NCBI RefSeq assembly: GCF_040938485.1
Contig: NW_027271200.1
Span: 992,001 to 1,056,000, forward strand
Direction of reading: 5' to 3'
Length of the DNA: 64,000 nucleotides
Source: Diadema antillarum
Lineage: Eukaryota
The notes beneath the pieces were generated by a model. The model was not told the origin of the DNA and did no database searches. It saw only the letters and a program-made list of their open reading frames with translations. The position numbers were made by a program, and so were the translations under genes. This document shows, one piece after another, positions 16,689 through 38,600 of this stretch. How positions within the stretch are numbered: the first letter of the stretch is position 1; each line of letters begins with the position of its first letter.

Positions 16689-17820
16689 TTCCATCCATTT
16701 ATTTTTTATACTTTTTGTTACCACTGCAAAGTATGTATTGTTTATATTTATTCATGAATAAGAATATGTATTACTGTATAACAACTTTAGGATCTGCATT
16801 GTTTGCAAACTTGATAATATGATTTATTAATGTATACTTTGTATTTGAAATTACTTTTCTGTTGGATGAAAGAAAAGCTAAATCAAATTGAATTGAATTT
16901 TATTGAATAAGTACAGGTTCGTACGAAGATTTGTTGCTATACCACTCTCTTACTGCCGACAAAACACAAGAATGCAAGGAATCTTGTCTATAATAAGGTG
17001 GAGTCACACGGTTACTTTATTATTCTTTAATAAACAAACTAGTGTTGATGCTTTAAAAAAATCAAAGATTGTATAATCAACTGAAAGTGCAAAGTAGTGA
17101 ACTTTGAGAGTTATAGACACAAGATGGGAATGTAAATGACAGGGATGAACAATCTATTGAGGTGACAGAAAGGTATACTTGTGCATCAGTGGTGAACCTC
17201 TGCCCTCAACGTTTCCTGGCATCACGACGACAGCCTCGATCGCCTCTCCGCCGGTAGCAAATCATCTGTACGATTGATGAGACAATATGATGACACAAGT
17301 GACAGAGCTAGCAACAAATTAGTCATTATTCATGATACTTCAACGTGATAAACGACGATCATAATATTCATAATGACTATCATTTCATTTGTTTCCATAT
17401 CCAAATAATACAAGATTATAACAAAGTAGCATATAAGATTTGTACAGGAAGTTGAAATGTCATGAAGTAAATACAATTACAAACAATTGCAAAAGTATAA
17501 CATAAATTATGTGCACTGTATAACAGCTTCACTTACAAACAATACGCTTGATTTACATAATTTGGTCATCGTGAAATCATTGAGTTAATTCCAGGGTAAA
17601 TATACGGTATGAAGCATGATCCTCATTGTGTGTGATAAAGACACGTTGTAATCATAAAGATTTTGATATTGAACATGCAATCCGCATCAAAATAATACGT
17701 CCTCGACTACAGGTGGGAAAGGGGGAGAGAAACTAGAACTGTCAACTCTGTGGAATGACAGTACTGCTCCGTCTCTTTCTCTTTCTTTTTTTATTTTGTC
17801 TTGTCATTGAGTCTCCTTTA

Positions 17821-18107
17821 CTCTCTAAAAAATCGAGTGAAAATATTCACTCTTGAAGGAGTGAATACAAAAAAAGAGTGAATTTCGAGTGAAATTGGAG
17901 TAAATTTTGAGTGAAAATGTTCAATTTCACTCGTTTTAGAGTAACGTCAGGGATCACTCCAAAATCTTCTAGTGATCCCTGTATGAGGTCACTCCAAAAT
18001 GAGTGAAAATGAAAATGAACATTTTCACTCGAAATTCACTCCAATTTCACTCTTTTTTGTATTTACTCCTTCAAAAGTGAATATTTTCACTCGATTTTTT
18101 AGATAGT
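17821..18107. mobile_element. Fold-back MITE with TA flanks
   Basis: TA|CTCTCTAAAAAATCGAGTGAAAATATTCAC ... GTGAATATTTTCACTCGATTTTTTAGATAG|TA. It is almost entirely palindromic with internal GAGTGAAA repeats. Confidence 0.8.
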
Positions 18108-18136
18108 ATATATATAAATAAATAAATATATATATA

Positions 18137-18176
<40 letters not shown>

Positions 18177-18756
18177 TATATTCTTGATCACCTTGTACTT
18201 ACTTCATTTTTTTTTTTCGTCATCATCCCCATACACGTACCCACACGGCAAGGGTGCGCTATAATTATTATCGTATTATTCTAAAATTGAGCTGGAATTT
18301 GTTGCGTATCTAATTGTAATGTGGCATACGTCGAAACATAATTATGTTCATTTTCTTGGAAGTGTCCATGTATAATTCATGTCCGTCGACATGTTGAGAT
18401 CGTGCATGGAGACACCTGCTTATGATTATAAATAGACATGCGATATTGATGAATAGCGCAGTCGCTCAGTGTCGATCTCCGCTTCTTTTTTTTTCCTTGT
18501 CCGTTTTCTTCTTATATGAGTGAAGGGAAATGACTGTTTTGGCTTAATGTTCATAATCCTATTTTCTTGAAAAAACAGGAGATAACAAAAAATGAATCGC
18601 ATATACCATGTAGAGCACAGTTGAAGATTTACGAACTGCTACCGCTGCCAACTAGTAAGATAGACTTCATGCCAGGTTTCCTTATCTTTTTTTCAATGCA
18701 GCTATAATGTATGTCAGTCATAATTCTCAGGACTCACTTGCTTTAATACTCGCCAT

Positions 18757-19864
18757 TCATTGGACCACGTCATCGGAAGGACCATCGCGGGAGTAAGCGA
18801 GGAGCCCACATGCAATGCAGAGACTGGTGACGAAGGCTACGGAGCCAAGGTGGCCGTACTTTTCAGTCGGTTTCGAAGTTCTCATTCCAGAGCTGATTGA
18901 TACGGTTTGCAGTTAAGGGAATGACATTAATGTGTGACTTGTATTCATGATCACAGTGGACATTTTAGTTTTATGGGGGCGCTAAGGCATAGGGGATAAG
19001 ACTACCGACTCCCAGTCGGAGGATCCGAGTTCGATTCCCGCCCAATACTTACATCCTAAGACAAGAATAATGTTTTTACCCACCCCGTCCCTCTCGACCC
19101 AGGAACATTTACCTGGCAATGCATGGGGTAATGATAATGGCAGGGCCCTCTATAGTAGAGCATTGGCAACACTGAAGAGGCTACTTTGGATAAAGAAGAC
19201 CTTAATTGTTTATTTGTTTATTTATTTATTCATTTCCAGCAATAGGGTGGATATAGCCCTTTCAGCACGGCTGATTTTCAAAGGGGTCCACTTGACATAC
19301 ATAAAAATCCACATAAAACAACAACAGTAATAAATGCATAATAAAAACTTATACACCATGGGTATAAAGTCATTGTAAAAAAGTCGAGACGTTAATATGA
19401 TACATTACAATAATTGCGGAAACCGAAAAAAACATCACTATAAAACAGTTACTTTGTTATGTAATGATATAAAGTGATTTTTCTTATAATATATAGAATA
19501 TAAATATTATCCTTGTTATCATTATTATCATTATACTTGCATAATTTTATGAAACTAGAAACACCTTCACCATTCATCTAGAGCACTGATGTCTGATGCC
19601 TTTAACTCTTTTAGATCCCGCTGATATTTTTGTAGTTTATTTTGTGCTGAACTTTGCGTTATCCTTTATAATATCGACGATGTAATTTTGATGAGAGAAA
19701 AACACGTACACCGACGAAATTCTCATAATACTTAAGTATACAAAAGGATACAAAAGGAGCCACGACACCAGGACGATCCCAATGGCCAGGAGGATGACCG
19801 GAAGCTGAGAGAGGACGGTGAAAGGAGTGGTCACGTACATGACCGTCGTCTCCCAGGCCGCTAG
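18757..19864 (-). CDS. TMEM258-like diverged paralogue (two internal exons; first coding exon uncertain)
   Basis: Exon 19864-19752 (tttacag|CTA...CTT TT|gtatcctttt) and exon 18892-18757 give LAAWETTVMYVTTPFTVLSQLPVILLAIGIVLVSWLL-F-SGMRTSKPTEKYGHLGSVAFVTSLCIACGLLAYSRDGPSDDVVQ*. This aligns to TMEM258 (ILL[A/S]IG..[..]W.L; VA.V.SL...G.L) and has the same phase-2 intron with U12 signals. Confidence 0.75.
18974..19125 (+). mobile_element. Degenerate tRNA-SINE 5' fragment inside the paralogue U12 intron
   Basis: A tRNA-like head ending in the B box gagttcgattccc, followed by ccaccccgtccctctcgacccagg. Confidence 0.5.
19742..19751 (-). other. U12-type 5' splice site of the TMEM258-like paralogue
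   Basis: Donor GTATCCTTTT, with branch point TTCCCTTAAC at 18921-18912 about 20 nt upstream of the AG at 18894-18893. Confidence 0.8.
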
Positions 19865-20650
19865 CTGTAAATTAATCGGTTGATCGATGGTACCAATAAA
19901 GATACAGTCAACGATTTTTTTTTCCGTCACGGATTATCCAGCAATGCACGGTGGTTGCCTGGGTCGCAAGATCTTGAAGTCATAATGTGCAAAAAGCATT
20001 CCTACCAGGGAGGTGCAATGGAAATAATTGAATCTCTTCGCATTTACTAGTACAGTGTAGTGCAAATTTATGTGTAGGCCTTTGTTGTGTTTTACAGTAT
20101 GACTATTATGGGTAGACTTACTGAATGATTTTCTTTCCATTGGTTTTGATATTCTATGCTCCAAATTCAAATCATCTTCGTCATTGATGTTTTCTGGATC
20201 AAGAAACAAGAGAGAAGGGAATTACATTTTGGTGTTCGTCACTGATCGCATGCACACTGTACACATGGCAAACGCGAGGGATTTAAAGGGGCATTCCAGA
20301 CGATTTCCATAATTTCACATCATGAGGTATGGCATAAATCGACAGCTCCATGTATAGATTTGTGAAATTTATTGTGATCCTTGAACAGAGAAATACATAT
20401 TTTGAAAAATAAATTACACTGAACAATGTTGATGACACAGGAGGCTCACATAATATTTCAGAAATGAAACAGGTTCGATTCTCTCACGACTTCTCGCAGA
20501 CGTGGTGCTCGCTCAATGTTTATAAGGGGAACGTATAGGTGATTCCACGTATGAGGGCGCTGTACAATGTGCTATTTCAGTCTGTGCTATATGTGCAAGC
20601 ATTGTAGCACAAAACTGAATACCGTGTACCATTACAAACAAGGAAAAGTA

Positions 20651-21721
20651 GAAATTACGCGGTGCGTAATATATGTCCCCGCCGGAAGTAGCATTTAGAA
20701 GCAAAATGTACAATATAGGTAAAAAGATGAAGGTCAAAGGTCAAAGAAGTCAAAGGTCAAAATTCTATGTAGAAGTTTTGAAGCCCTCACCTAGTGCCAT
20801 CACATAAAGCAAACGGAATCGAAATCGGGTTAGAAATGGCGAAGGAGTAGCATTTTGTAGCCAGTGTACAATATAGGTAAAAAAATCAAGGTCAAAGGTC
20901 AAAGAAGTCAAAGGTCAAAATTCTGTGTAGAAGTTTTGAAGCCCTCACCTAGTGCCATCACTTAAAGCAAACGGAATTGAAATCGGGTTACAAATGGCAA
21001 AGGAGTAGCATTTTGTAGCAAAATGTACAATAACGGTCAAAAATCAAGGTCAAAGATCAAAATTCTGTGTAGAAGTTTTGAAGCCCTCACCTAGTGCCAT
21101 CACATAAAGCAAACGGAATCAAAATCGGGTTAGAAATGGCGAAGGAGTAGCATTTTGTAGCCAGTGTACAATATAGGTAAAAAAATCAAGGTCAAAGGTC
21201 AAAGAAGTCAAAGGTCAAAATTCTGTGTAGAAGTTTTGAAGCCCTCACCTAGTGCCATCACTTAAAGCAAACGGAATTGAAATCGGGTTACAAATGGCAA
21301 AGGAGTAGCATTTTGTAGCAAAATGTACAATATAGGTCAAAAATGAAGGTCAAAGGTCAAAGAAGTCAAAGGTCAAAATTCTGTGTAGAAGTTTTGAAGC
21401 CCTCACCTAGTGCCATCATATAAAGCAAACGGAACCAAAATCGGGTTAGAAATGGCGAAGGAGTAGCATTTTGAAGCAAAATGTACAATATAGGTCAAAG
21501 GTCAAGGTCAAAGGTCACAATTGAAATTCTGTATAGAAGTTTCAAAGCTCCCATGTAGTGCTATCATATAAAGCAAACAGAATCAAAATCGGGTTAGAAA
21601 TGGCGAAGGAGTAGCATTTTGAACATTTTGATCACACACGGACGCACACACGGACGGACACACACACGTACGGAGCCCGTTTCATAGTCCCCTGCTCGAA
21701 CTCGTTCGGCGGGGACAATAA
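20651..21721 (-). mobile_element. Helentron-associated interspersed element (HINE/DINE-1/Tsp-like) carrying a tandem array
   Basis: Subterminal inverted repeats TGTCCCCGCCG (20674-20684) and CGGCGGGGACA (21707-21717), a 3' hairpin ATTACGC-GGT-GCGTAAT (20654-20670), a GTCC/GTGT microsatellite near the 5' end, and A/T-run flanks. Confidence 0.8.
20690..21620 (+). repeat. Tandem array of about 160-bp units (about 5-6) with 300-bp higher-order dimer
   Basis: The core tgtagaagttttgaagccctcacctagtgccatca recurs at about 20768, 20927, 21068, 21227 and 21385. The line at 20761 is nearly identical to the line at 21061. Confidence 0.9.
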
Positions 21722-22569
21722 AATGCAGATATAAGTTTATGCGCGCACTCTGATCAAGTTCAAAGAGATAAAACAAAGGACAGAACAAAAAAAAAAACCA
21801 CACAAAATGGTAAGCTTGGAAAATTTTAACCGTTTCGTGATTCGTTTGAACAGATGAAAAACACCTAAATCTCGTACCCACATGGAAGAAAGTATGTTTT
21901 AACACAAAACAAACACAAACGTCATACACGCATACATAGTATTTCGTCAATTCGTTTTTCATCTTCATATGGTGAAAATACATCTTTTGAGTTTTTTTTT
22001 TGTATTTTGTTTTCATAATAACGTGCACTGTCAAAATGGAAGTGAATTAAGTGTTCAAACTTGTAAGTCTGTACTTTCAGACCGTTATTCACTTACCAAG
22101 TAGCTACTGCAGAAAAGCCAAATTCAAACCACCTGCATAATAATATTTTGAGTCTCCGAATTGATAATCAAGGCGCGTTACAGCAGCCCCCACGAAATAG
22201 TCAACAATTAAACAGAAAACACCTTTACCTTACAAAGCACGGAATCTCTGAGTACGGACAAAACCTGCAAGGAGGTGTTGGTAGTGAAGTGATTTTGACT
22301 TACCGCGTATGCGATATTGCCGCACATACTGAACTTGATAGTGGAAAATGTGTGTGGTCAATGTCCACCGAAAACCATCAAACTGCGTTAATGACCAACA
22401 GGTATAGGTATAGCGAAGACGCAAGTGTACACGCCTAGTGCTGGCATGTGGAACAGGACGCCTTTATTGACGGCCAGCTATATGCAGGTCAAATCAAACG
22501 GTTGATTAACTTTTAGCTATTTCATCTTTTTGTTGAAGGGTGTTAAATAGCGTTGTTTGCGCTTGAGAA

Positions 22570-22570
<1 letters not shown>

Positions 22571-22640
<70 letters not shown>
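22571..22640. repeat. (TG)n microsatellite
   Basis: Direct reading. Confidence 0.95.
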
Positions 22641-22643
<3 letters not shown>

Positions 22644-23296
22644 ATGAATACCCTTGCAATCCGGGATATAATCGTTATTACTGTACAGGATTTTTTATTC
22701 TAATAAGTAAACTAATGAAAGTGAGGGAATTTATGATGGAGGCCTACTCGCAATATGTGAAAAACTGAGCGGCGGCGCCAGAATGAACGCCATCTTGGAT
22801 TACGTAAAACGCCCATATGAGGATTTTCAGTACGTTATTCTAGACATATTTCTTTACCTATCCCGAAAAAAAAAAAATATCAGCTTGTTACCAAAATGTC
22901 CAGTTGACCTAATGCTCTTGGCCTAATAACCAAGACTACCGGCTTGTTCTGTTCATGTACTTCGTTTGAGCACTTTCTTTGCCTTACTTTGAATTGCTTC
23001 ATTGTGAATACTGCTGTTGTTGGTGTGCATGTTTATTTTTGTCCCATTGCTGGTTTTGTTTTAATGAGAATGCCGCTTTATTGTTTGTGTGCACATTGAT
23101 TTATGTCATATTTGTAGTACATAAATCGATAGTGCCATGTATATTTGTGGAACTTATTGTGGTTCTTGAGCAGATAAACCAATTTGTACTCTAAAAACCC
23201 CATTACAAATTACACTGAACAAGGATGATGACAATGTGATGTTCCAGTAATGTCGCAACGCAAACCATTACATTACGATTTCCTTAATAAAACTAA

Positions 23297-23645
23297 AGGC
23301 CCCGTCACACTACAGCGAATGCCCAACGAATGCCCAACGTACGTCCAATAAATTTGAAAATTTGAAGATATGTTAACATCCATTGGTAATACAGGTGTAC
23401 TAGAATAGTTCGTAACATGCTTGGCGTTCTTTGTATTCATTAGCTATTCGTCGGGATTCGCAGAGATACGCTGGAGCCGATTTTATCTTTTAAACATGTC
23501 CAAAATCTCCAGCGTATCTTTGCGAATCCCTGAGTAGCTAATGAATTCAAAGAACGTCAGACATGCAAACTGTCTTCACATTTTCGAATTCGTTGGACTT
23601 TCGCTTGGCATTCGTTGGGCATTCGCTGTAGTGTGACGGGGGCCT
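23297..23645. mobile_element. PIF/Harbinger-type MITE
   Basis: TAA|AGGCCCCGTCACACTACAGCGAATGCCCAACGAATGCC ... GGCATTCGTTGGGCATTCGCTGTAGTGTGACGGGGGCCT|TAA. Confidence 0.85.
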
Positions 23646-24037
23646 TAATGTACAAGTATGACAGAAAAAAATAACTTCACCTGTGTAGAATTTATGCAAG
23701 CTTTATTCTTTTGTTCTTCTTCCATAACCCTAATTCTGCTTTCTTATATGAAGCTGCTATCATTGACTTTGATCCCCCTCAGTCCCCCCCCCCTCATGTG
23801 TACAACACGTATTCTCATTACACTCATTCTCACACTTGTGGGCAAGGATAAATATGCAAACATACACGTATATTCACTGACTTTCCCACACACGTATTTG
23901 CAAGCACGCATTACAGATGTACTTTCCTCATTTAAACACACACGATAGAACAGCAATCCGGACAGCAAGCGTTGCATAGTAAGTGTGCATGTGTGTATTT
24001 GTGTCTATGTATAACATGATTCAATTCTGTTTTGCTG

Positions 24038-24173
24038 NNNNNNNNNNNNNNNNNNNNNNNNNNNNNNNNNNNNNNNNNNNNNNNNNNNNNNNNNNNNNNN
24101 NNNNNNNNNNNNNNNNNNNNNNNNNNNNNNNNNNNNNNNNNNNNNNNNNNNNNNNNNNNNNNNNNNNNNNNNN
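24038..24173. other. Assembly gap (N run)
   Basis: 136 N. Confidence 1.
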
Positions 24174-25449
24174 CTGTTATCAATCAGACCAATGAGATGC
24201 TATATGTTTATAGTATCAAGTGATAACTTCTACTTCTGTGAAAAAAAAAAGTTGTATACATTGTACAAGGATATCATATTGTAATACTTTTGTGTCCAAA
24301 TTATGTTACATGTACTTTGTTAGAGCAGTACCAGTTTATAATACATCACCTTGCCTTTGTATTAGTTGAATGGAAACAAATAAATGCCACTGAAAAAAAG
24401 AGAGTGTCTGTGTGTATGTGCATGTGTGTGTGCGAGTGAGTTTGTGCATGCACATTTCACTTATACATGAATGATTGCACAGTCTACATGTATATGAGTT
24501 CATCCATCTTTGTCTCTATCTACAGTGCTAAAAAAAAATCACTCTCTCACAGTTCAGTGGCAACGTGAAGGATACTGCAAGGATTTTTTTAATTTCTTTT
24601 CTTCTGTACAGGAAACATTTCTGAACTACAAGTGAACATGGTACATTTCCTATACATGTACACTCTGTATCTTGGTGTTCAAATATTTTTTTTCTCCTGT
24701 TGGCCTGTATCGTCAATTACAAATACATTGTACTAGACACATACGACACTAGAAAAATACGCAATTTCTACCCTTCTTTTACATTTCTTTGTACTTTTTT
24801 TTATTTTATTTTCTTCTGAACTTTTTCAGTGTGATAGCAGAAACTCTCCTGGAAATCCATGCAAAATTTCCAGAAATATTTCTGCTATCATCATAATCAT
24901 GACAACAATGATGAGAGGAGGGATTTAAAGACAACAAACACTTGGTTTAAAAAAAGAAAGTGATACGTGTATACACAATTTCAAATTCATCCTCTGCATC
25001 AGAGAAAATATAACAGCACTTTGAATTGTCTCTGCAGTACTGGACAACTTATGTCCCGACTCCCTTTCCCATGCTTAAACAAAATATGGAAAAAATGTAT
25101 GTGATCCCATTTCATGAACCTTTACTCACTTGGACAGCGATGGCTGTAAACCTGGACTTATCCATTTCATGTTGTACATGTATTTCAAGCCGCAAAGTGC
25201 TGCTTGGAATATTTCCAGCCAACTAATTCCATCTTGTCCAACATTTAAACCAATTACTGCATGTCATAATTTGCTGTTGGGGATAGGATTAGAACAAGGT
25301 TACAGCCAAACTGCCAAAACTGCACCCCCCCCCCCACCCCAAATCCCCAAACCAAACAAGCCAGAAAAACCATGTGACTGCAGATATCAGCAACTCTCAG
25401 AGAACATGATTACCAGGGAACCTCAAATAGCTAACACATATACATACGT

Positions 25450-25626
25450 CAGGGGCGGATCCAGAAATTCCGTAAAGAGGGGGCGTGTTTACAAAATTAA
25501 AGGGGGGGGGGGGGGGGGGCGCACGCACCCCTCCCCCATTGTTTTCTTTTTATTTCTTCTGTTTCAACAAAAAATAAAGGGGGGGGGGACGTGCGCCGGT
25601 TGCGGTCCTCCGTGGATCCGCCCCTG
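25450..25626. mobile_element. MITE, CAGGGGCGGATCC..GGATCCGCCCCTG, 5-bp TSD TACGT
   Basis: 13-bp TIR and TACGT on both flanks. A homologous copy lies at 55730-55886. Confidence 0.8.
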
Positions 25627-26918
25627 TACGTACATATCAAATATGCATGTATACAGGGAAATGGAATGTCATATTGAATTAATTTTGACAACATTTGCAG
25701 TGGACCTGATGTCAAACAATATTTTACATTAAAAAGGTATGCTGACAGTGCATATTTTGTTTGTTTGTTTGTTTTCCAACATAAGATCATGAGAAGTCAA
25801 CAATTCATTGATATTTGTCCTGGGCTATGTACATGTACATCACAAGGAGATGCAAGAATCAGTAACTGGTAGAAAAGGTATCACTGAAAGGAGAGGAAAC
25901 CAAAGTGAAAAGAAATGGCTCAGGAATCTCCAGACAAAGGCTACCACCATCTCATGTGCCAAAATGGGGTGAAAATTTACAAAAAAATCACTCTTGTGTG
26001 ACATCATAAAAATTTTCCCCTAACAGGTTGTACATGTTTTTACATCTCACGTACTTGCTTACCATTTACTCCCAAACCCCCTGTCCCACCAATCACCACT
26101 CATCGACTCTCCCAAGAATGAAAAACAAACAAACAAAAAGAACAAAACACCCCCCCCCCCCCCCAAAAAAAAAAAAAAAAAAAAGAGGAGAAGAGTACAG
26201 CAGTCAATATCATATCATATTGCCTCGGGACACTTTACAGATGGTTGGCATGATCTTTCCAGGGGCAGACAGGAGTTCTCCCAAGCCCTGTAGGATGAAT
26301 GAAAACAGTAAGAAAGATAGATCTATGAAAGAAGACTTTGAATCATGTTTGGCATTTTAGTTATCTTTACAAAATAGAAAAGAGCTGATGAGAGGACAAT
26401 ACATGAAGTTGATGAATGGAAAACAGCATTTCAATTCCTCTTGCCAACCTTTGTCTTAATCAATTTAATACATCTGTTAGGTTGTGGCAGTCACTTATGA
26501 AACTGAAGGAGTTGACATACGTAATTGCATATGATCATAATAATGTACAGTATGCATCCATCGCACTTTTATTTACAGAACTGTAGAACATTTCTTTCAT
26601 GTGAGAGGAAGATACAAGTGTAGTGCAATCAACCGTTGATTTGTTCCCCTTGGCTTAAAAGTCCATCTCATTGTGAATATCAAGTTTGACATAGCAAGAC
26701 AAGGAATGAGAGATAGAAATGACAGCCTTGGACTATATATACACTGTACAGTAAAAACTAGACAAAGTACCCTCTAGCGATAGAGGCCAATGTACATGCA
26801 TGCCAGTCAGGAAACATTAATACAAAAGCAAAACAAAACATTAGATTAACAATTTCAAAGAGATACTCACCAATGAACAATCTCTAAAATACAGCAGTCT
26901 TTGTGAGGAAAGTTGACG

Positions 26919-29900
26919 CTATACATATATTCCAACCCACAACATTAAGAAGAGAATTCCAAATCCCATGAAAAGACTGGCAACTAAGGCAACTAGCAGC
27001 TCCTTGTATAGATCCCGTGTGTACTTTGTGGCTGTGACCTCATAGCTGATCCACAGGAATGCAGTCAATCAAGGAAAACTACAACCTTGTCTACAACCTT
27101 GCCCACATCAAATCTTTTTAAACTGACGATATAGCTTCGACTTATGAGGGATTAAAATCAACAGAATAGTAGTATAAAGAGAAGAGGACTTGAGAAGACC
27201 TTCGACTTAGATGATTCTTCGACTTATTCGAGGTCACCTTAAGCAAGGTTGACTTATTCAGACTGAGCACACGGTATGAAAGGGTAAAACAAAGTGAAAT
27301 GCAGAAATAGAATGTGTACAAGTGAATACATGTACCAAATTCATGACTGCCAGTGATGAAAGTTGTGTAACACAGTTGAGAAGTATAGTTTTGGTTGAGA
27401 TGGGAATTCACATTTTAACTTTTTGTGAGATACAGATAATTAGAAACCTCTTACTGTAAACGTCAATAATTTTTTGTGCGATTAATTTTTCATGCTACAG
27501 TTGTACGCGACTTAAAACATATTTTGCATGTTCTTGAATTCGCACTGCCCAAGTGTCAACCCATTCAAGGTGTGCACAGAAATTGTTGATATACATTTGC
27601 CGGTTTTAGAATTTGGGCTTGCTAAAAGTAGCGCTAAATATGCAAAAATTGATGTACAGTATCACAAACGTTTCTGTATGTATATGAAATATTAAAGAAC
27701 ATACAATTCTAGGAGGATTAAAAAATATATTTGATGAAAATTGGTTTTGAAGCGGCCGGGATATCCACTAACAATGTAAATCAAAGTGGTCCTAATAAAT
27801 GCTAGGTCCAGCCTTCAAAGTTACTAGGATTGCCACAGTGAAATGCAAACCTGCTACATTTATTACCTGAACACACTGCTAAAGAGTTGATACGATTTTA
27901 TCACTCAAAAAGGTAAAATGAATGGAGCAGACAAATAATCACATACATTGTATACATGTTTAAGGCACTCATTAATAAGATCTTTCTGTTTTCATTAAAC
28001 AGAACTTTCTCCTATGACAAATTTTTAGTATCATTTGAGGCAACACCTATGAGTAATATGTACACAATGTGTATTTACAATGTAGCTGACCATGGTTTGA
28101 CATTTCACAAACATGCAAGTTTAACATTCACAAGGATACACCAGGAACCAGGCCATGAAGAAGACTCCGATGGAGAGGAGGATGAGGGTGAGGTGAGGGT
28201 AGACAGCCGGATTAACCGGGCTGACGTACCTCGTCATCGACTCAATAGCTGCTGACTGAAAGATCAAATTGGAAGCACATTTACATATCCACCATACATT
28301 TAACGCTGCAATGGTAGTACAATGTATTTCTATCAGCATACCCAGCATACAGATATAAACAAGTACTTATATGCTTGTCCGTACCAATATACAAAGTGAA
28401 TAAGAAAATTCTGCATTTTCAATTGAAGGATGACAAAAGTGGCAACTGGCTGCCTTTAACTGATAACATAGAGGGTGTAAATCACCCATACACCTTGCGT
28501 AGAAAATCCATTCAAGACACAGTGGGATGATAAAGAAACCACTAGTGCACATATTGCAAAATTGTATGTTACATAAAAAATATATAGAGAGTAAGCAACC
28601 CTGTTTGCAGCAGGCTTTGTACAGGGTGCGTATTTGCAGCAGGGGTCATTTCATTCATTGCTTGTATTCTAAAGTGGGCCTAAGTGCACATGGTGTTCAT
28701 TAGCTGTCTTATTGATGAATGAAAATGCCCCTGCCAGAAATAGGCACCCAGCTGCATGCAGCAGCGTTGGTTGTTCACTGTATATGTTCCAGTCATGCCA
28801 TCGATATTATCCAAATACCTAGGTGGAGAGGAAATAATTTTGCGAATAATAATGATAATCATAATAATAATAATAATATCAAATAAATAATAGCAATAAT
28901 GATAATAATAATAAAACTAGAAAAGCACTTTGAGAGCGCAGACCTCTGCCAAGCAGCTTCTTTCCATTGATGATCTTTATTCTTGCTCTTCATAGAGATC
29001 AGCGATTTCCACCCAATGAAAAATCGCTCGATTTCCCCAAATAGAAGCCTTCATTACATCATAAACCCTCAGCTGTGCGCCGTGCCTCTCCATAGCAGAA
29101 ACTAGAGCATGCACTTTAGTGCGCGTATGAAACCTAAAAAATGCCCAGCTTGAACTCCCAAGTTCATTGACCCTACCTGCCAAAATATCGAAAATCCATC
29201 ATAAAATCCATAAAAATTTCTGGATCACTACCAAATTTAATCATCTGTTCCTTGTGCTATTCTCAACCTTTCCTGCAAGTTTTCTTAATGCGTCCACAAC
29301 TTTTTGAGTTATTTTGCACACGGACAAACAAACAAACCAACGGGCAACGGTATTAAATGAAAACATAACCTCCTCCCTTGGCGGAGGTAATAAAACACAG
29401 TTCTGTTTACATTTCAAATGTAGACACCCTACACTTGACAATATCTTAATGATGGGACAAATCATTCAAAATTAGACCCTACAGGAATTAAGATCGGTTG
29501 CCGTGTAAAGTCAGGAAGAGCCAAGACTGCAACGAGTGCATGAGTGCAGTGCGAGAGTGCGAGCGAAAAACTCTTGTGAAATGTTGTAGACCTCTAGGCT
29601 CTATTAAGAATGACACAAAATTTCCTTATGTGTGGGACTAAACCAGTGATTTATTCCAACGTGTAGCGGATGTTAGGACTCAAAATTACGGTGGTTCTGC
29701 TGGTCACCGCTTCAAAAGATTTTGAATACCACTCATCAGTAATACATTTAAGGGGTACCTTTTTAATATTTATATCTGGTGCGGTCAGTTACAGGTGCAG
29801 GCTACGTGTGATTTTGATGCGTCCAGACTCGTCTTCTCCTACCTCCTACATAGTATGATCCACGGTGCGCCACGTAAGCAATGTACACGATACCACGACT

Positions 29901-30105
29901 ACACACCACAGCAAATGACTGCAGCACCAGACAAGCAGGTGAAAACAGTGAATAATATTCACAATGTAAACCATGCTGGCCTACATTAATACAAAATGCC
30001 TTGTATCCTTGTATAACAATTGCATGAGAGGACCTACTTGAATGACTTAATTTATATTACGCTAATATAATATCTGTCACAAGAGTACATGTTCAGTCTC
30101 ACCAT
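26919..30105 (-). CDS. TMEM258: Transmembrane protein 258 (OST5 subunit of oligosaccharyltransferase), 81 aa
   Basis: Exons 30105-30103 (ATG|gtgaga), 28255-28140 and 27045-26919 give [81 protein letters not shown], nearly collinear with vertebrate TMEM258. The splice phases (0 and 2) are consistent. Confidence 0.96.
27452..27661. mobile_element. Short TA-flanked MITE (TACTGTA..TACAGTA)
   Basis: Degenerate terminal inverted repeats. A related end lies at about 42251. Confidence 0.45.
28131..28139 (-). other. U12-type (minor spliceosome) 5' splice site of TMEM258 intron 2
   Basis: Donor GTATCCTTG, with a branch-point-like TTCCTTGAT at 27076-27068 about 23 nt upstream of the AG at 27047-27046. 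Confidence 0.85.
28916..29391 (-). mobile_element. Second HINE (different family) in TMEM258 intron 1
   Basis: SubTIRs ACCTCTGCCAAG and CTTGGCGGAGGT, a terminal hairpin GCACT-TTGAG-AGCGC, a (CAAA)n tract, and insertion in an A/T run. Confidence 0.7.
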
Positions 30106-30790
30106 TTTCGACTCAACCAGATCCCAGAGAGGTCAAAAAGGAGTTTAGCTAGGTGACCTATGTACTACATCCGCTGCGGTTCGCACCCCCCCCCCCCCTC
30201 CATTGAATTCTCCGATGGCATCCATGCACATTGCAAGCACGCCGCACACTGCACTTTGTACACGATGAAGCCACTACCATTAATTCATAGGGGTGATATT
30301 CATTTCTTAGCCGTTGGTTACCAAGAAAAATCCCAAATTATATACTGTAAGGAAACTTCGCTATTCTTTTAAGAATTTTCTAATGTTATTATATCCTTGT
30401 GGTGTCAATCATTTCAAGTATTTCGTCAAAACCTGAAATGGAGTTAACAGTAAATCCCAAACTCATTAGTAATGAATTCTTCCAGCTGCCAACCAAGTGG
30501 TAGTCATGGAAGGCGTGTATACAGAAAGAACGAAATTAATCAATAACCTATTGTTCAGGATGTTTTGAAGCTCGTCGAACTTCTTGTACACTGTGCGAAA
30601 ATATTCTCAACAATGAGCTAATCGATGGAAGTGTAATAGGTGGTTAGAACATAGATGGTAGATTAAACAAAGCTTATATTGTGTTCTCGAGATTTTGTGC
30701 TGTGTTCCTTTCCGTCAATACTGTCTGGTGGTCATGGTGGAAGCAAAACCGCTACCGTAGTAGCAGCGTATCCTACGCTGAGTGAGCTGG
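30106..30790. promoter_or_regulatory. Putative bidirectional promoter between TMEM258 and the KIAA2012-like gene
   Basis: The TMEM258 ATG exon ends at 30105 on the minus strand. A plausible non-coding first exon of the plus-strand gene ends at a ga|gtgagc donor near 30782. The genes are divergent with less than 700 bp between them. Confidence 0.45.
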
Positions 30791-32622
30791 CAAGTTTTCA
30801 GACGCCGGGCTAGCTGCTGCTGCTACCCATTTAATTACTGAGTCCTTTGTGACGGAGGATCTACTACTGACTAGTAGGTGTAAATTATTTGTCAAGCCAC
30901 GGCTGCATGTTCTCATCTTCTATTCCAACACTCTCCTCAAACCACAGCGGATTTCGTAAGTCGTACTGTGTCACTTTCTTATTGTACTGGACCTCTAGGG
31001 CTATGTAGCATAGAAACTGTAAATTATACAACCGCGTGCAGTGCAGTGTACTCTACTGTAAACTGAGGGTCTCACTAAGTGAAACGTTACATCGACATTT
31101 GTTAGTAGATCTAGGCCTAGTTGTACCAAGGAGGTTTAAGAGATGGAGTTCCAGCTGGCTGTAATTATTCAAACAGTTGTCAGATTTCTATTGATGTACA
31201 AAAGAATTCCACAGGTGCATTTGTGCCTTTGATGATCGATAGTAGGTAGGCCCACACGCCACAGTAATGTTGGCTAATTTTGCTTATTTACACTGTATTT
31301 ATTTGTTAAATGAAAAGAAATCTCACTTGATGATAAAGCATGTAACTGTTAAAACAAAAGTAAATCCCATCCACAAATTTGTGCGAAAGTGTATATCAGA
31401 GCTGTATCATACGAATCCTGGAAAGCCGGTTTTATCACTTTTCCACTTAATTTCCACAAATGAAACCAATATTGGAATACAATGTGTATATTGGATCTTC
31501 AAGTACAATGTATGATTCTTGATAGATACATATCAGATTATAGTGCCCGGATAAGGCGCCGGATATGCCCAGTTGAGTAATTGTCATTTTTATTTCATCA
31601 TTTTATTTTATTTATTTATTTATTTTTTTTTTTGGGGGGGGGGGGGCGCAATTTCTATTTGCGCATCCTCATGTCTGTACTACCTACCTTTTATAAGAAT
31701 TCTAGGGATAGCGAAAGGTAATTACCATCACAGAGACATATCTTCTGGGTTAGATAGGTTGCTGGTGATTATGCAATGAGACACGAGTCAATTGTCTTCC
31801 TATCTCCAGTTTGGCACATGCTTCAAATATTTTTGAGCGGCGGCATCGAACATCTAGCAAAGGAAACAAGACGGTTGTGACTCCATTCTCTTGAACCTCC
31901 TTGGTTGTACGTACAATATGCACATTATTGTACAGTACATGTAGGTCGGGAGATGCCATATTATTATACCTCACTCTCATTTGAAGGAAGCAACACTCAA
32001 TGTTTGTTGAGACGTGAAGCACATGACTGACATGGGACCTGTTTTCATTACAGTAAAGAGTGAATATTTTACAGTGTGGAGATTTTCCTGACTTATTGTG
32101 CCATGTGTTCTGATACCTCCTGACATGCTGGAACTAAAAGTAAAAAAAAACATTAGTTTGATATGCAAATGATTATACATTTGTAGGGCCTACAATACAG
32201 TCACAGAAATACCATTATTCACATATAATGTCAAAGGTAAGCCGATTAATGAAGTTCACTAAATTTGACCTGACAAAAAGTTTCTTGCACAAAAATTTCC
32301 ACTTTTATGCAATATCATCCTTAATAGACAAACAATTTGTATTTGGGAGCATTATGTGAGTGAGAAGTTCCAATCTGGATCTGGATCTGTACACTGCCAG
32401 ACCAGACGGTATAATCGATTAACAATTCTGCTGGTTTGATTTTTTTTTTTTTTTTTTTAATGAAGGCTGATATTGTCATCACTTTTACTCATAGGTTGCT
32501 GTCGAAAGCAGGAAGAATCACGAAAGATGTCCATTCTTCGCTGGAGACTTGGTGATACATCATTTGAGTGACATGGAGAATCTCTAGAATTCACCTTGGC
32601 TGCTGACAATCCACAGGCAATA

Positions 32623-35600
32623 ATGTCATCGACATCAGTCTTCAGTCCTCTGGCTCATGGCTGTGGATCATGGGATGGTGATCTACAGCAACAGCTGGAA
32701 GACAAGAAGGTGAAAATGCTTCATTTGAACATTTTGAAAATGTACATCCACTTTACATCTGTATTGTACAAAAGTATGAATATTGACTAATATATGTGAC
32801 CCGCTACAACATAAGGATTCTAAAGTCGCTGACAGCCGAGCCGAGAAAATCGAGTTTGAAGTCACATCATTAAAATTGGTCAAAGCAATCGGATTTCTGT
32901 TTTTTGCATAATTTTGTAGTCTAATGTTTTGTTCATCATCTGCCGAAGTTTCAAAGCTAAATGATCAAAGGAAAGGCAAGAAATCAGTGTTTTTCTGGGT
33001 CATGATTTTCCGACTTTCAATGTAAGAGAAATGTGTCCAAAGATTTGGATTTAGCGCCGCAGCTTGACTCCGCCCCTAGCAACGAGGGAGTGATCTTATT
33101 GGTCAGTGTGTGGCATCTTGATTACCGATTGGTCGTGCATGGACCGCTGGCGCTAAGCTTGAATGAACATGGCGGAGGTCGCTAGGAGTGTGCCTTCTAC
33201 TGTCGGGCGGTGAAAACTGTCTTGCCTCCCCTTGACCATGAGAGTGTTGGAAGGACAACTTTGAAGGCGTTTTTCTCAAAACTCTGATTTCCTCAACCAC
33301 TTGACATGCGCTCATAAAATCATCGATATCTCCGCAACCGAGTACTTTTATGGGTTGTGCTATGTATGAAATTAAAGCAAAAGAGTACGGGAATTATGTC
33401 ATGTCATTTTCAGAAAATTGTCCTCCCCCAACTTTCGGATCCTTTTGTTGTAGCGGGTCACATATCTGTAATATACCATTATGTGTGACTGTCATCTTGC
33501 ATAAAACTTACTTTCAATGTATGTCTTCCTGTGACCAGAACCTCAAAATGTATAGTCAAAACTAAGTAGTCTACCAAAGGAGGATTTAGACAACTACAAA
33601 AAAGCAAATACCATCTGGGACATTACTGTAAGGATTTTCTTGAAGTGCTCATTTTTAAAGTGCACCATCACATGGTTACCAACAAACCCCAGTCGCCCAC
33701 TCAGGCAGTCAACCATAGGCCTACACATATATGCTTTTTCCAGATTCTTAGCAACACCCCTTTAAGGATGGATATTGGTTTCATTTTGACCCCCTATCTC
33801 AGGCTTTTGGAATGGAAGCCAGCAAAATTACCCCCCCCCCCCCCCCCCCCCCATCACAGGTAGGCTTATTTGGAAGGGAAGCTAAAAATGCAGCTTGACA
33901 TGTACATGTACATGCAATTGATGTGGTGAAATGTCCTGCTAAAAGAAGGCCAGGTCAGCATGCTTTGCAGCAAAACATGCACAGTAAGTACATTCAGGAG
34001 AATCTGGGCAAACATCAAGAAGCTGCAATACCCATATTATTTTTTACTTTTTGAGGTGTATTTTGAGTGTATTAAAAATATGTCCCAACAGCAGTCATCC
34101 CCCCCCCCCCCCCCCCCCATAAACTGGTCAGAATTTGTGGGTGCAGTTAATGCAACAGTGAAGAACAGTAAATTGTTTAAATACAATTTTTTTTCCCCCA
34201 CAAATCTTACAGACCAAGGTCCTCAGTAAGTCCCTGCCGGGAGAGTCCTTGGACCACTTGGAGAAGAGGGTCAACATCCCAATCCGAATCAAGAGTCAGC
34301 TTTCCCAGATAAGGACCATTCTCCGGGAGGCATCCAAGAACTACCCCCAGCAGTCCCAAGCCGTCGGTGAAAACTTTGCAGATCTCATCCGGCTGAAGAC
34401 ACAGACCACCGAGTACTCAAGGCCTCTCGGCTCCGTTCGCTTGCGACCCCGGACTGGTGTCATTCGCGCCAACAAGCAGCAGTCCCGACCCAGCCTCACT
34501 GGATCGCACAGACCTCTCAAGAGGGCAAAAAGCGCCCCCACCTCCCGCCGCTCCTCGCAAAGTCCAACTCTGCCTGCCAGAATTGATGCTTCCTTGCCAA
34601 AAACTCTAACGACCAGGAAGGGTGCCCTGATGCTGTTTGCAGCGCCCAAAGATGTCGCCTTTTCTGTCCCGGAACAAAGGTGCTACCGTGTCAATCCAAA
34701 TGCCATCGATGTTGACGACTGGGTATCCGACCTTCAAACATTTCAGAAATTAACAAATAGTGTCCTTCATTATGGATCTGAGGTAAGCAATAGAAAGGTG
34801 TATGTGGTGCTCTCTGGACTTGTGTCTGTGTTCTGAAAACATGGAAAAGCAAACATTATCAATCACACTTGATTTTGCCAAAGAGCTGTGACTTGTTGTG
34901 ATGATCAAACAAAACTCATATTGAATTGTTATGTGTCAGATTTCATATGAATATAGTGCATCAATTAAAATTATTTGTGTCTTCTCAGATTATTTTCCTG
35001 CTCAATGTACAATATGTGAAAAGTAGAATTAATGAATGCATGATGCACTGAACCATCTCTATATTTGAATGGACAAATTATTTGCTATGATCATAGCATA
35101 TGCAATTAGGAAAATCATGAAGACAAGTTGCAATGTTCTGATAGAAGGAATCTTTTGTGGAAAAAAAAAATCTCTTTTCAGGCTGGCGATGGTCTAGAAC
35201 AGAGAAATGCACCCTACGACACATCTTGCTTCAAGTTTTTACACAAGGAGGAAGGTGAACATGGAGTGGATTTCCGATTGCAGCCCGGAGGAGACTTTGT
35301 CTTTTACCTCAAAGACATGAAGACAAAAGCAGCGTAAGTTATGCATAGTGTTAATTTCATGCATAATCATTTTTTAGCCAACTCCAGAACTCCTCTGATA
35401 ATGCTGTTAATATACAATAGTTGCGTGACTACATGTGCAGAAAATCTTTTTTCATCTGGTATGTGCGTGGTAGATACCATCTGCTGACTATTGATATTCA
35501 CCTTGGGCAAACCATTAGGGGTCAGCATCGTTTTCTTGTGTGGGTATGTGGGGTGGACACTTCACCGGGTTAGCACCCTGCTCTGTGTGAGGAAGTAAAG

Positions 35601-38600
35601 TGGCATCTTTTATTTGCATGAGTGATTAACTTTCTCATGCACTGGTCCTCCGCCTGATGTCCAATCTGAGGGACAGAGTATTTATGCCTCTTACTAGCCA
35701 GAATGGCATAATTACACACAACATTGCCTAACTAGACTCATCAGGAGGAATTAAGGTCTAGAATTTCATCAAATTTGGGTCAAAGCCACCTTTTTGAGGG
35801 GGCTCAAAAGCACTCAAAGGGACATAAGTCAAACAAAATATTGTAGCCATGAATGGTTTAATTTTGAAAGGGGCATTCCGGCCAGTGGGAGGGTCATGGC
35901 GGCAAATTGCCAATGGCCAGTGGGTATTTTAAGCCCTGGGAATTGATCCAGAGTCATTTAATTGCATGGCAGATGTGCTACCGAATGGGCCCCATCACCA
36001 CCCTTGTGCAGGAAAATGAGAGATTTATGTTTGAGATAGGTCTTCTATGCAACCTTCTCGAACACTCTCATTCTCTTAAATGCCTCTCTATCACAGGGTC
36101 AGAAATGTCATAACATCGATATCTCAAGCCAACACACCAGCCCCCGACATGGCGGAAGAGCTGAGCGATGTGCTGGAAAAGTTTGAAGAGGATGGAAGCC
36201 TCGAGCCAGACGGTGCTCTGGAGGAACAGATCGAGAGCGTACCTCCCAAGACGGAGTTTTTACGGCCGGCCATCTTGAAATCGGACGGGCAAGTGTACAG
36301 TGAGACCAGCAGCAATGCAGACATGAGATCGGTCAGCCACACCATCAACAGCACCACCACAGAGACCACCGTCAGATTTGCATCGGACAGCACTCAGCCA
36401 CAGCAAATCCAGGCAGAGGCCAACTTGCTGTCACGTCCCGATACTGCGAGGTAACCAGCTGATGTCTTTTCTAGTGTCTTATTGTGTCTCCTCCCTGATG
36501 TGTACAATATGTAGAAATGAATACTGTATTGCCCAGTTGAATCTCGGAATGTAGCTTTACAGGTGAATGGTTTCATGGTATATGATATAGCATCGTGGTA
36601 TGATTATTTTGGCTATGTTTCTTATGTTTAATCATGTACATGCTAAACAACTTGTGCTTTTCTTGTTTGATGCATTACATTGTTTAAAGTTCTCTAGAAA
36701 TAGGCATCATAGTGATTGCTACAGATGGTCAAAGTAATCTTTTGAAAATTACAAAGCTGCTGCATTTTGACAATTACTACTGGGAATAGAAAATGTATCT
36801 GAATTTGATGTTGTGCATGAATTTCTTGCTGCTTCTTCCACCCACTTGTATTATGTATTTATTTATTTTGTACGTAGATCAAACAGATCCATAGGAAGCA
36901 TCAGATCAGGCACACCTTTCTCGCTAAAAGACTTGACTGCATCTTTGAAGTCAGGAGGATACCTTGGGAGACCGGTTAGTGCACCTTACCCCCCCTACTC
37001 TCCGCAAGCAAGAACACCATCTCTTCCACCCGAGAATGAGGATTTTGGAGGGGAACAAGAGGAAGAAGGCGATGGCTATGAGGATGTCGAAGAAGAATGG
37101 GTAGTGGATGAAGAAGCGAGAGCTGCATCAGTGAAGTCAAGATCCCGTCAGTCGTCACACCACTCTTCCCGTCAGTCATCACACCACTCTTCCCGTCCTA
37201 AATCGAGCAGACCCACATCACGCAGATCGCAAATTAGCGCTGGAGGGCATCCTGAGGAGGATGAGCCCAGTCGAGCCCCGAGTTCGGGAAGCAGGAGGTC
37301 AAGGGCGGAGAGCTCCAGGAGCCGGAAGTCTTCCGCCGGGATGCGATCTCAGCAAGGCGAGGATGCAGGAGCCGCAGAGCTGGGAGGAGAAGATGATGAT
37401 GACTGGCAGTCAGAGGATCTGGCTGAGCTCGGGGTGGAAGATCTCGAGCCAGACGTAGCCGAGGCGGATGCTCCGCATGAAGCAGGGATGGATGCAGTGG
37501 ATGCAGTGGAAGGTGAAGAGGGCCCAATGCTACCCCATCGCAGCAATTCAAGGACATCCTCATTACCACCAAGAGTTTACACACCAAGAACACGGTCATC
37601 ACGTCGATCGACTCCACCTCCGGAGGGAGATGAGTGGCCTGGTTTGGACGATAACGTCGGTGAAGTAAGGCCTGGATCGGGAAGAACTAGAACAGGCTCT
37701 GCAAAGTCAAGACAGGTTAGTTTCATGTGTGATTGGATCTACTTTTCTGGAATAGTGATATGTTCCTGAATAGCCATAGGATAAGGAGATGCTACCAGCA
37801 TTGTCAATCGTGGTTTGCTCTGATTTATATGTTGCTGTTTCTCCCTCATCCACAGAGGTAGCTCCTTCAGAGCACTATCAATTTACATGACACACTTTAA
37901 ACACTTACAAAAAGTATACCAGTGACTTCCATTATAATGAAGTCCTCGGGACCGGCAGTTTTCTTTTGTTATAATGAATTATCAAAATTTTGTTATAGCC
38001 GAACAAATGAAGTGCTTATGAAGATATATGGACAATAACTTTGGGGCCTAAATTTCCACCTCGCTGTTACTGAAATTTTGTTATAACTGCATTTGTTAAA
38101 ACGGGAATGCATTATACTGACATTGTAGTTGTGTGTGACTGAGTAGAATTGTAAAGTAGAACTTTTCACAGTAAGTAGAGAGCAAGATGGGGGCAAAATA
38201 TGGCTACACATTCCCCTTCCCCCCCCCCCCCCCCACACACTTCTACCATGTTTCTGGAGTTTTTGGGAGCATTTAATGCATGTCTGCATTGTATTGTAGT
38301 TTTGTGGGATTGTCAAGACATGCCTGTCCTTTATTGTAGCTGTAATATTGGCTTACCTAAGCTTTCATTTTCAATTTTGTTTCAACAGTCATCCCGCAGC
38401 AGGCCAGGAACGTCTGGTTCTGCTAGAACGGCTGCCTTGGAAGACGTTGAGGAAACTGTGCAAGAAGAGATGCAGGTTGACGGAGAAGAAAAGTGGGAAT
38501 CTCCAGTGGAGCAAGGTATAAAGAATTCCCCTTGTTATTCACCATTTGGTTTCAACCATATGCTTGGCTTTAGAGAAAGAAAGATTTTCATGTCTGATAG

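What the first reader, a model, noticed from the sequence alone, without database searches (positions are those of the whole stretch)
18757..19864. Hidden diverged TMEM258 paralogue in tandem, retaining the minor-spliceosome intron
Seen: a 113-nt exon (one codon shorter than the 116-nt TMEM258 exon 2) begins collinearly (LAAWETTVMYV vs [11 protein letters not shown]). It ends at the same phase-2 position in GTATCCTTTT and splices through a CCCTTAAC branch point to an exon with VAFVTSLCIACGLL (vs [14 protein letters not shown]). The frame is open, but the conserved C-terminal LWVGIYV is replaced by a polar tail, SRDGPSDDVVQ. Established: TMEM258 is a small OST subunit, usually single-copy. Inference: this is either a neofunctionalised OST5-like micropeptide (a variant OST complex or a dominant-negative regulator) or a young pseudogene. 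The start is either the internal ATG at 19840-19838 or an upstream exon such as ATG TGC GGC AAT ATC GCA TAC GCG|gtaagt ending at about 22304 (phase 0, in frame).
Basis: partly seen in the sequence, partly recalled or inferred. Interest (0 to 1): 0.7.

Follow-up and report, generated by a model that had tools for sequence, protein, structure and literature searches.

The report
Diverged tandem TMEM258 duplicate in urchin
Seven kilobases downstream of this sea urchin's normal TMEM258 gene (a small subunit of the N-glycosylation enzyme) lies an old, very diverged copy of its two main coding exons that still has an open frame, two membrane helices and the rare minor-spliceosome intron, so it was probably a working gene for a long time, but whether it is expressed today could not be tested.

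Summary
The canonical TMEM258/Ost5 gene has exon 2 at 28255-28140, a U12-type intron and exon 3 at 27045-26919, on the minus strand. The look-alike has a 113-nt exon (19864-19752), an 859-nt intron with a GTATCCTTTT donor and a TTCCCTTAAC branch site, and a second exon (18892-18757).

Both exons are homologous to the parent, collinear, with the same intron position and phase. A second haplotype contig (C913) carries the same pair.

It is not a young pseudogene. dS to the parent is about 1.15, yet it has no frameshift and no stop. Both helices stay hydrophobic, GC is 58% against 35% in the flanks, and the U12 signals are intact. Neutral-decay simulations reject each of these.

It is no longer an orthodox Ost5. 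Only 9 of 31 family-invariant residues remain, the C-terminus is replaced, and Pfam does not hit it.

The two haplotypes differ by 6 nonsynonymous and 0 synonymous changes, so present constraint on the protein is weak. No orthologue lies within 10 kb of TMEM258 in S. purpuratus, L. variegatus or Holothuria, and no predicted protein anywhere matches.

The scan had not noted this before. Verdict: a real, old, TMEM258-derived paralogue that is either a fast-evolving gene or a recently relaxed relic.

The parts
28140..28255 (-). Canonical TMEM258 exon 2 (116 nt), the parent of exon A
   Evidence: Pfam Ost5 hit at E 2e-9. 88% nucleotide identity to S. purpuratus exon 2. Identical in both haplotypes.
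27046..28139 (-). Canonical U12-type intron: GTATCCTTG donor, TTCCTTGAT branch site at 27076-27068, branch A 23 nt from the 3' end
   Evidence: The same GTATCCTT donor is present in S. purpuratus, L. variegatus and Holothuria.
26919..27045 (-). Canonical TMEM258 exon 3 with stop codon, the parent of exon B
   Evidence: Pfam Ost5 hit at E 1.5e-18. One difference between the haplotypes.
19752..19864 (-). Candidate exon A (113 nt, phase 0 to phase 2), encoding the N-terminal segment and TM helix 1
   Evidence: One V/F difference between the haplotypes.
19838..19840 (-). Internal ATG and the only ATG in exon A. It is a possible start for a 74-residue product (length counted, sequence not joined).
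   Evidence: Read from the sequence. The position corresponds to the MTRYV/MSRY starts of the 74-77 aa TMEM258 forms.
19742..19751 (-). U12-type 5' splice site GTATCCTTTT
   Evidence: Identical in both haplotypes.
18893..19751 (-). Candidate intron (859 nt; 877 nt in C913). No similarity to the parent intron.
   Evidence: Substitution divergence between the haplotypes is 4.75%.
18912..18921 (-). U12-type branch site TTCCCTTAAC. The branch A is about 20 nt from the 3' splice site, and 26 nt in C913 because of a 6-nt insertion.
18757..18892 (-). Candidate exon B: basic loop, TM helix 2, an acidic or polar tail, and a TGA stop (TAA in C913)
18742..18747 (-). ATTAAA, a possible polyadenylation signal 10 nt after the stop. 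This is inferred only.
   Evidence: Read from the sequence. In C913 a 403-bp insertion follows it directly.

Best explanation
This is an old DNA-level tandem duplicate of TMEM258 exons 2 and 3 together with the U12-type intron between them. For most of its history it has been kept by selection as a spliceable open reading frame for a small two-helix membrane protein.

Shown:
- common origin with TMEM258;
- identical intron position and phase;
- intact U12 donor and branch site in two haplotypes;
- an open frame;
- two strongly hydrophobic segments separated by a basic loop.

Inferred mechanism:
- It is transcribed from a 5' exon or promoter that has not been identified.
- The intron is removed by the minor spliceosome.
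- Translation starts at the ATG at 19840.
- The product is a hairpin ER-membrane peptide of about 74 residues with an acidic C-terminal tail in place of the conserved LWVGIYV end.

The protein has left the orthodox Ost5 sequence space and its amino-acid sequence is now under weak constraint. It is therefore a fast-evolving, lineage-restricted TMEM258 derivative rather than a second OST5.
For: Homology and gene structure.

Age: dS to the parent is 1.15 and dN is 0.74, against dS of 0.73-0.82 between this species and S. purpuratus or L. variegatus. Introns and flanks share no similarity.

Against neutral decay:
- The only indel across about 246 nt is a single in-frame codon. Local haplotype DNA shows 0.25 indels per substitution, which predicts 3-30 frameshifting indels. 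P(none) is 0.04 down to below 1e-6.
- The frame has no stop; substitution-only simulation gives P of 0.023-0.08.
- Both 15-residue hydrophobic maxima are retained (2.99 and 2.37); P is 3e-4 or less.
- GC is 0.58 against 0.35 in the intron and flanks, and was never reached in 3000 simulations.
- The 8-nt donor plus the branch-site core are unchanged; P is 0.01 or less.

Both haplotypes keep the frame, the stop position (TGA or TAA), the donor and the branch site. The amino-acid differences between haplotypes spare the TM2 core, and the one in TM1 is hydrophobic.
Against:
- The haplotypes differ by 6 nonsynonymous and 0 synonymous changes. pN is 0.033 against an intron divergence of 0.0475, which rejects strong present-day purifying selection (omega at or below 0.3 has P of about 0.01).
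- No orthologue lies within 10 kb either side of TMEM258 in S. purpuratus, L. variegatus or Holothuria leucospilota.
- Neither exon matches any predicted protein in the word search, and exon A matches none of the 1.84 billion representatives.
- Pfam Ost5 does not hit either exon.
- Only 9 of 31 family-invariant residues are kept.
- No 5' exon or promoter was identified.
- In C913 the branch-site-to-3'-splice-site distance is 26 nt, far from the reported 11-13 nt optimum (PMC3584512), and a 403-bp insertion sits 16 nt past the stop.
Confidence: 0.5

Rival explanations
1. It is a relic. The duplicate was a working gene for a long time but is now silent or dispensable, and has only recently begun to decay, so no disabling mutation has hit it yet.
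For: - 6 nonsynonymous and 0 synonymous differences between the haplotypes. Nonsynonymous diversity is about 70% of intron diversity.
- Structural polymorphisms sit at sensitive places: a 6-nt insertion between the branch site and the 3' splice site, and a 403-bp insertion just past the stop in C913.
- It is absent from the syntenic neighbourhood in three other echinoderms.
- No predicted protein matches it anywhere.
- No identifiable first exon.
Against: - Both haplotypes still have an open frame, the same stop position and intact U12 signals.
- With only six changes, the 6:0 split is expected 18% of the time under neutrality and also fits diversifying selection.
- The protein databases appear to lack this species, so their silence is weak evidence.
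Confidence: 0.4
2. The two exons are an alternative 3' exon pair of the TMEM258 transcription unit itself. Canonical exon 1 contributes only the ATG and ends in phase 0, so splicing it to exon A would be in frame and give an alternative isoform.
For: - In S. purpuratus and L. variegatus, exon 1 ends in ATG|GT, and the protein starts with M followed by the exon 2 residues.
- Exon A starts in phase 0 behind a usable acceptor.
- Same strand, 7 kb downstream of the parent, with no promoter of its own found.
Against: - It would require skipping the canonical terminal exon and its polyadenylation site across 7 kb.
- No data support it.
- According to the review read, alternative splicing events that involve U12-type introns appear almost entirely absent.
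Confidence: 0.07
3. It is a chance resemblance, or a long-dead pseudogene drifting neutrally since the duplication.
For: - Pfam finds nothing in either exon.
- Exon B alone is not significant in a free alignment.
- Pairwise dN/dS is about 0.64, which is near what a copy neutral since birth would show when compared with a conserved parent.
Against: - Exon A homology: z of 6.8 and E of about 5e-5.
- Exon B in the fixed register: P below 1e-3.
- A rare 8-mer donor at the homologous phase.
- Neutral-decay simulations fail on frame, indels, hydrophobicity, GC and splice signals.
Confidence: 0.03

Closest known systems
TMEM258 / Ost5 (Pfam PF05251), the small subunit of OST subcomplex I that packs both its helices against the single helix of RPN1/Ost1 (PMC7226087)
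   Same: - Derived from it by tandem duplication.
- Same exon structure, intron position and phase.
- Same length class, with two hydrophobic helices and a basic connecting loop.
- The LLxIG core of helix 1 and the VAxVxSL...G.L core of helix 2 are recognisable.
   Different: - 22 of 31 family-invariant residues are changed.
- The lumenal SPVNP motif is degraded.
- Helix 2 is shortened, and the conserved LWVGIYV end is replaced by an acidic or polar tail.
- It falls below the Pfam threshold.
- It evolves at about the neutral rate, whereas TMEM258 is nearly frozen (dN 0.03 at dS 0.8).
Paralogous OST subunits that define alternative complexes (Ost3/Ost6, STT3A/STT3B; PMC7226087)
   Same: It is a duplicate of an OST subunit gene, so in principle it could give a variant complex.
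   Different: Those paralogues are conserved across large clades and are biochemically shown to sit in the complex. This copy is so far seen in one species, is poorly conserved, and has no expression or interaction data.
Gene duplicates that retain a U12-type intron at the ancestral position
   Same: The donor GTATCCTT and a TCCTTAAC-like branch site have been kept in both copies long after neutral sites reached saturation.
   Different: Nothing unusual in kind. The branch-site-to-3'-splice-site distance (20 or 26 nt) is longer than the 11-13 nt optimum, but the parent gene in this genome also has 23 nt.
'Transmembrane protein 258-like' entries in mammals (for example Arvicola and Ochotona)
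   Same: They are extra TMEM258-related loci in a genome where the gene is normally single-copy.
   Different: Those are 78% identical to the query exon and 79 aa long, so they are close copies. This one is far more diverged, and it keeps its intron, so it is not a retrocopy.

Membership tests
Ost5/TMEM258 (PF05251) | Sequence match to the family HMM above the curated cut-off (27.4 bits) | tested here: not met
   Neither exon gave a Pfam hit even at E up to 10. A six-frame search of the whole genome with PF05251 listed only the canonical exons, in both haplotypes. The test was exon by exon only; the joined product was not scored.
Ost5/TMEM258 (PF05251) | Common descent with TMEM258 (collinear homology, same intron position and phase) | tested here: met
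   for homology. for exon boundaries and phase.
Ost5/TMEM258 (PF05251) | Two transmembrane helices joined by a short basic loop | tested here: met
   Maximum 15-residue Kyte-Doolittle hydropathy is 2.99 for exon A and 2.37 for exon B, against 2.56 and 2.51 in the parent. The loop contains R, K and K.
Ost5/TMEM258 (PF05251) | Family-invariant residues and the conserved C-terminal LWVGIYV | tested here: not met
   9 of 31 invariant columns are retained. W76, V77, G78 and V81 are replaced by D, G, P and D.
Ost5/TMEM258 (PF05251) | Physical membership of the OST complex (packing against RPN1/Ost1) | not testable with these tools
   This needs co-purification, or a complex model built from the joined product, which was not built.
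U12-type (minor spliceosome) GT-AG intron | 5' splice site matching the RTATCCTT consensus | tested here: met
   GTATCCTTTT at 19751-19742 in both haplotypes. Only 4 such 8-mers occur in the window.
U12-type (minor spliceosome) GT-AG intron | Branch site resembling TCCTTAAC close to the 3' splice site, with no strong polypyrimidine tract | tested here: met
   TTCCCTTAAC at 18921-18912, matching 7 of 8 positions of the consensus. The consensus is quoted from my own knowledge. The stretch that follows is not pyrimidine-rich.
U12-type (minor spliceosome) GT-AG intron | Branch-site-to-3'-splice-site distance near the 11-13 nt optimum | tested here: inconclusive
   20 nt in the window haplotype and 26 nt in C913. 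The surely functional parent intron has 23 nt here and 14 nt in S. purpuratus and L. variegatus. The optimum is taken from PMC3584512.
U12-type (minor spliceosome) GT-AG intron | Actual removal of the intron in RNA | not testable with these tools

The most novel reading that the evidence does not exclude
The copy is an expressed micropeptide, spliced by the minor spliceosome and evolving fast, possibly under diversifying selection. It still pairs with the RPN1 helix but lacks the conserved TMEM258 C-terminus. It would therefore compete with TMEM258 and tune, or define a variant of, the oligosaccharyltransferase complex in this sea-urchin lineage.
Probability: 0.12. Interest if true: 0.65.

Novelty: new variant of a known kind. 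Interest (0 to 1): 0.35.

Why it matters
TMEM258/Ost5 is one of the most conserved small membrane proteins in eukaryotes, and its role in OST is still listed as 'not clear' (PMC7226087). A duplicate that kept the two-helix hairpin but freely changed most conserved residues would be a natural mutational scan. It would show which features matter for being a membrane hairpin, as opposed to being an OST subunit.

If the copy is expressed, it could be a lineage-specific modulator of N-glycosylation. It is also a clean example of U12 splice signals being held intact in a duplicate long after all neutral similarity has gone.

If it is silent, it is only an unusually well-preserved relic.

Tried and rejected
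- Word-index protein searches with exon A (inside the contiguous read-through ORF) and with exon B were blank. The HMMER search of exon A against 1.84 billion representatives was blank. ESM Atlas look-alikes for both exons gave no usable hit.
- These blanks are weak evidence. The canonical TMEM258 of this species is itself missing from the database; only the S. purpuratus and L. variegatus proteins, at 95% identity, were found.
- Searching the S. purpuratus and L. variegatus whole genomes is not possible; the loci are not in the genome collection.
- Downstream synteny. tblastx of the S. purpuratus and L. variegatus downstream 10 kb against the window found nothing, so gene order downstream of TMEM258 is not shared and cannot place the copy.
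- The weak PF05251 matches elsewhere in the genome (C492, C188, C302, C790) are unrelated proteins, not further copies.
- Haplotype conservation as an exon detector. Perfect-identity runs of 75-250 nt are common across the whole interval.
- Dating the duplication relative to the species split. The candidate is equally distant from the window, S. purpuratus and L. variegatus parents, so the signal is saturated and the question is unresolved.
- The Rfam scan of 17000-31000 gave only sub-threshold miRNA-like matches. ARAGORN found no tRNA in the intron.
All searches were exon by exon by reference, and counts were summed across exons.

Full report
**What is there**

The window is from a sea urchin. 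Its TMEM258 exons are 85-88% identical in nucleotides to those of Strongylocentrotus purpuratus and Lytechinus variegatus, and the upstream neighbour gene is syntenic.

The canonical TMEM258 gene lies on the minus strand:
- exon 2 at 28255-28140 (116 nt, Pfam Ost5 E 2e-9);
- a 1094-nt intron that starts GTATCCTTG and carries TTCCTTGAT near its end;
- exon 3 at 27045-26919 (Ost5 E 1.5e-18).

In S. purpuratus and L. variegatus, exon 1 supplies only the ATG. A likely equivalent in the window is the ATG|GTGAGA at 30105. This assignment is an inference.

- exon A at 19864-19752 (113 nt);
- an 859-nt intron from GTATCCTTTT to TTCCCTTAAC, then 19 nt and CAG;
- exon B at 18892-18757, ending in TGA.

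All details of the observation hold.

**Is it more than chance?**

Yes.
- Exon A aligns with canonical exon 2 over its whole length with a one-codon gap. BLASTP gives E 4e-5, a profile of 15 TMEM258 proteins gives E 6e-5, and the global score is 6.8 sd above shuffles.
- In three other echinoderm loci, the best tblastn hit of exon A is TMEM258 exon 2.
- Exon B is too diverged for a free alignment. In the register fixed by the exon start it shows 9 of 41 identities (P about 8e-4) and 42% nucleotide identity (0 of 20000 shuffles) without any gap.
- The 8-mer GTATCCTT occurs four times in 128 kb of both strands. Two of those are at the homologous exon ends in the same phase.
- The last bases of both introns and the first bases of the following exons are also alike.
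- Introns and flanks share no similarity. This was therefore a DNA-level duplication, with the intron kept, and it happened long ago.

**A second haplotype**

The assembly is 1.75 Gb in 2963 contigs. It holds a second contig, C913, that is collinear with the window over at least 30 kb at 85-99% identity. I read it as the other haplotype.

C913 carries both the canonical gene and the copy. In the copy it keeps the frame, the donor, the branch site and the stop position (TGA becomes TAA).

The coding differences are:
- one in exon A (V/F, hydrophobic, in helix 1);
- five in exon B (loop, helix edges and tail; the helix 2 core is untouched).

All six are nonsynonymous and none is synonymous. pN is 0.033, against 0.0475 substitutions per site in the intron and 0.061 upstream. 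The canonical exons differ at 0 and 1 positions although their intron region aligns at only about 85% identity.

With about 180 nonsynonymous and 63 synonymous sites, six out of six nonsynonymous has P of about 0.18 under neutrality, about 0.01 at omega 0.3 and about 2e-4 at omega 0.1. Present-day purifying selection on the protein sequence is therefore weak at best. Diversifying selection is an alternative reading.

**Long-term history**

Against the parent, dS is 1.15 and dN is 0.74. The canonical gene shows dS of 0.73-0.82 and dN of 0.03 between this species and S. purpuratus or L. variegatus, and dS of 0.41 between those two.

So the window species branches outside the S. purpuratus / L. 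variegatus pair. The duplication is of a similar age to that split or older. The candidate is equally far from all three parents, so the order of events is unresolved.

Had the copy drifted neutrally through that divergence, several things should have happened that did not.
1. **Indels.** Local haplotype DNA shows 0.25 indel events per substitution, 72% of them not multiples of three. Even at a quarter of that rate, 3-8 frameshifting indels are expected in 246 nt. The only indel is one codon.
2. **Stops.** Substitution-only decay from the parent to the observed identity leaves the frame open in 2.3-8% of simulations.
3. **Hydrophobicity.** Both 15-residue hydrophobic maxima (2.99 and 2.37) are kept in at most 3 of 10,000 simulations.
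4. **Composition.** GC of the two exons is 0.60 and 0.55 (GC3 0.81 and 0.57), against 0.35 in the intron and 0.34-0.39 in the flanks. That is higher than in the parent exons (0.56 and 0.41) and was never reached in 3000 simulations.
5. **Splice signals.** The probability of an unchanged 8-nt donor plus 7-nt branch core is 0.01 or less.

Together these show that for most of its life the copy was transcribed, spliced at these sites and translated as a two-helix membrane peptide. This rests on inference from sequence statistics.

**What it is not**

It is no longer an orthodox Ost5.
- Pfam does not hit either exon.
- Only 9 of 31 columns invariant among 15 animal TMEM258 proteins are kept.
- The SPVNP motif is degraded.
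- Helix 2 is followed by an acidic or polar tail instead of LWVGIYV.

**Distribution**

- No trace of the copy lies within 10 kb on either side of TMEM258 in S. purpuratus, L. variegatus or Holothuria leucospilota.
- In S. purpuratus an NDUFB2-like gene starts 3.7 kb downstream. In L. variegatus a RhoGAP gene starts 5.5 kb downstream. Neither gene is in the window.
- Neither exon matches any predicted protein. This species' own TMEM258 is also missing from those databases, so this says little about expression in this species.
- It does mean that no annotated orthologue with shared words exists in the S. purpuratus or L. variegatus proteomes.

**U12 signals**

- The GTATCCTT donor at this position is shared by all four echinoderm TMEM258 genes examined.
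- A Nematostella model reads VYPF at the junction, which is what a translated U12 donor would give. This suggests the intron is ancient.
- The candidate's branch A lies 20 nt from the 3' splice site in the window haplotype and 26 nt in C913, longer than the 11-13 nt optimum (PMC3584512).
- The parent intron in this genome has 23 nt, against 14 nt in S. purpuratus and L. variegatus. Distance alone does not disqualify the copy.
- Other U12 introns have been noted in this genome by the scan (not checked here).

**Start of the gene**

- Exon A has a single ATG (19840-19838) with G at position -3. A product starting there would be equivalent in extent to the 74-77 aa TMEM258 forms.
Perfect runs of that length are common throughout the interval, so this has no evidential value.
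- Another formal option is splicing from canonical exon 1 (ATG, phase 0) to exon A, which would be in frame.

**Limits**

- The spliced product was not joined, searched or folded. All searches were exon by exon by reference.
- N runs in the window were left alone.

**Verdict**

| Reading | Probability |
|---|---|
| Real, old TMEM258-derived tandem paralogue with its U12-type intron retained | above 0.95 |
| Maintained as a coding gene for most of its history | about 0.8 |
| Still expressed and useful | about 0.5 |
| Acts on the OST complex | about 0.1-0.15 |

Noticed in passing
G000:C913:300001-326379 against window 8000-36818: The 1.75-Gb assembly carries a second contig collinear with this window at 85-99% identity, with many indels. 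It is evidently the other haplotype. Any copy-number statement for this genome must allow for such haplotigs.
   Followed up: partly
window 20687-21621: A minisatellite with a 158-bp unit (about 6 copies, 86% matches) lies 0.8-1.8 kb upstream of exon A. The interval that holds it (about 20650-21715) finds no counterpart in the C913 haplotype.
   Followed up: partly
G000:C913:317934-318337 (window equivalent about 18741): A 403-bp insertion in the C913 haplotype lies 16 nt past the copy's stop codon, directly after an ATTAAA. It is possibly a mobile element in what would be the 3' UTR.
   Followed up: no
protein P0007 (Nematostella vectensis TMEM258 model): The annotated protein contains an extra 'YPF' at exactly the exon 2/3 junction. 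This is what a short read-through into a GTATCCTTT donor would give. It hints at a mis-modelled U12 intron at the same position in a cnidarian.
   Followed up: no
window 27046-27076, against L016 and L017: The canonical TMEM258 U12 intron of this species has its branch A 23 nt from the 3' splice site. The S. purpuratus and L. variegatus orthologues have 14 nt. This is an unusually long distance for a conserved, surely functional U12 intron.
   Followed up: partly
window 18985-19060 (inside the candidate intron): A GC-rich, tRNA-like or SINE-like stretch (GGGAATCGAACTCGGATCC...) is conserved in both haplotypes. ARAGORN calls no tRNA there.
   Followed up: partly
window 32636-37042: Exons of the gene upstream of TMEM258 are conserved with S. 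purpuratus and L. variegatus (67-80% nucleotide identity) and are 99% identical between the two haplotypes. Downstream of TMEM258, the gene order differs among all three species.
   Followed up: no
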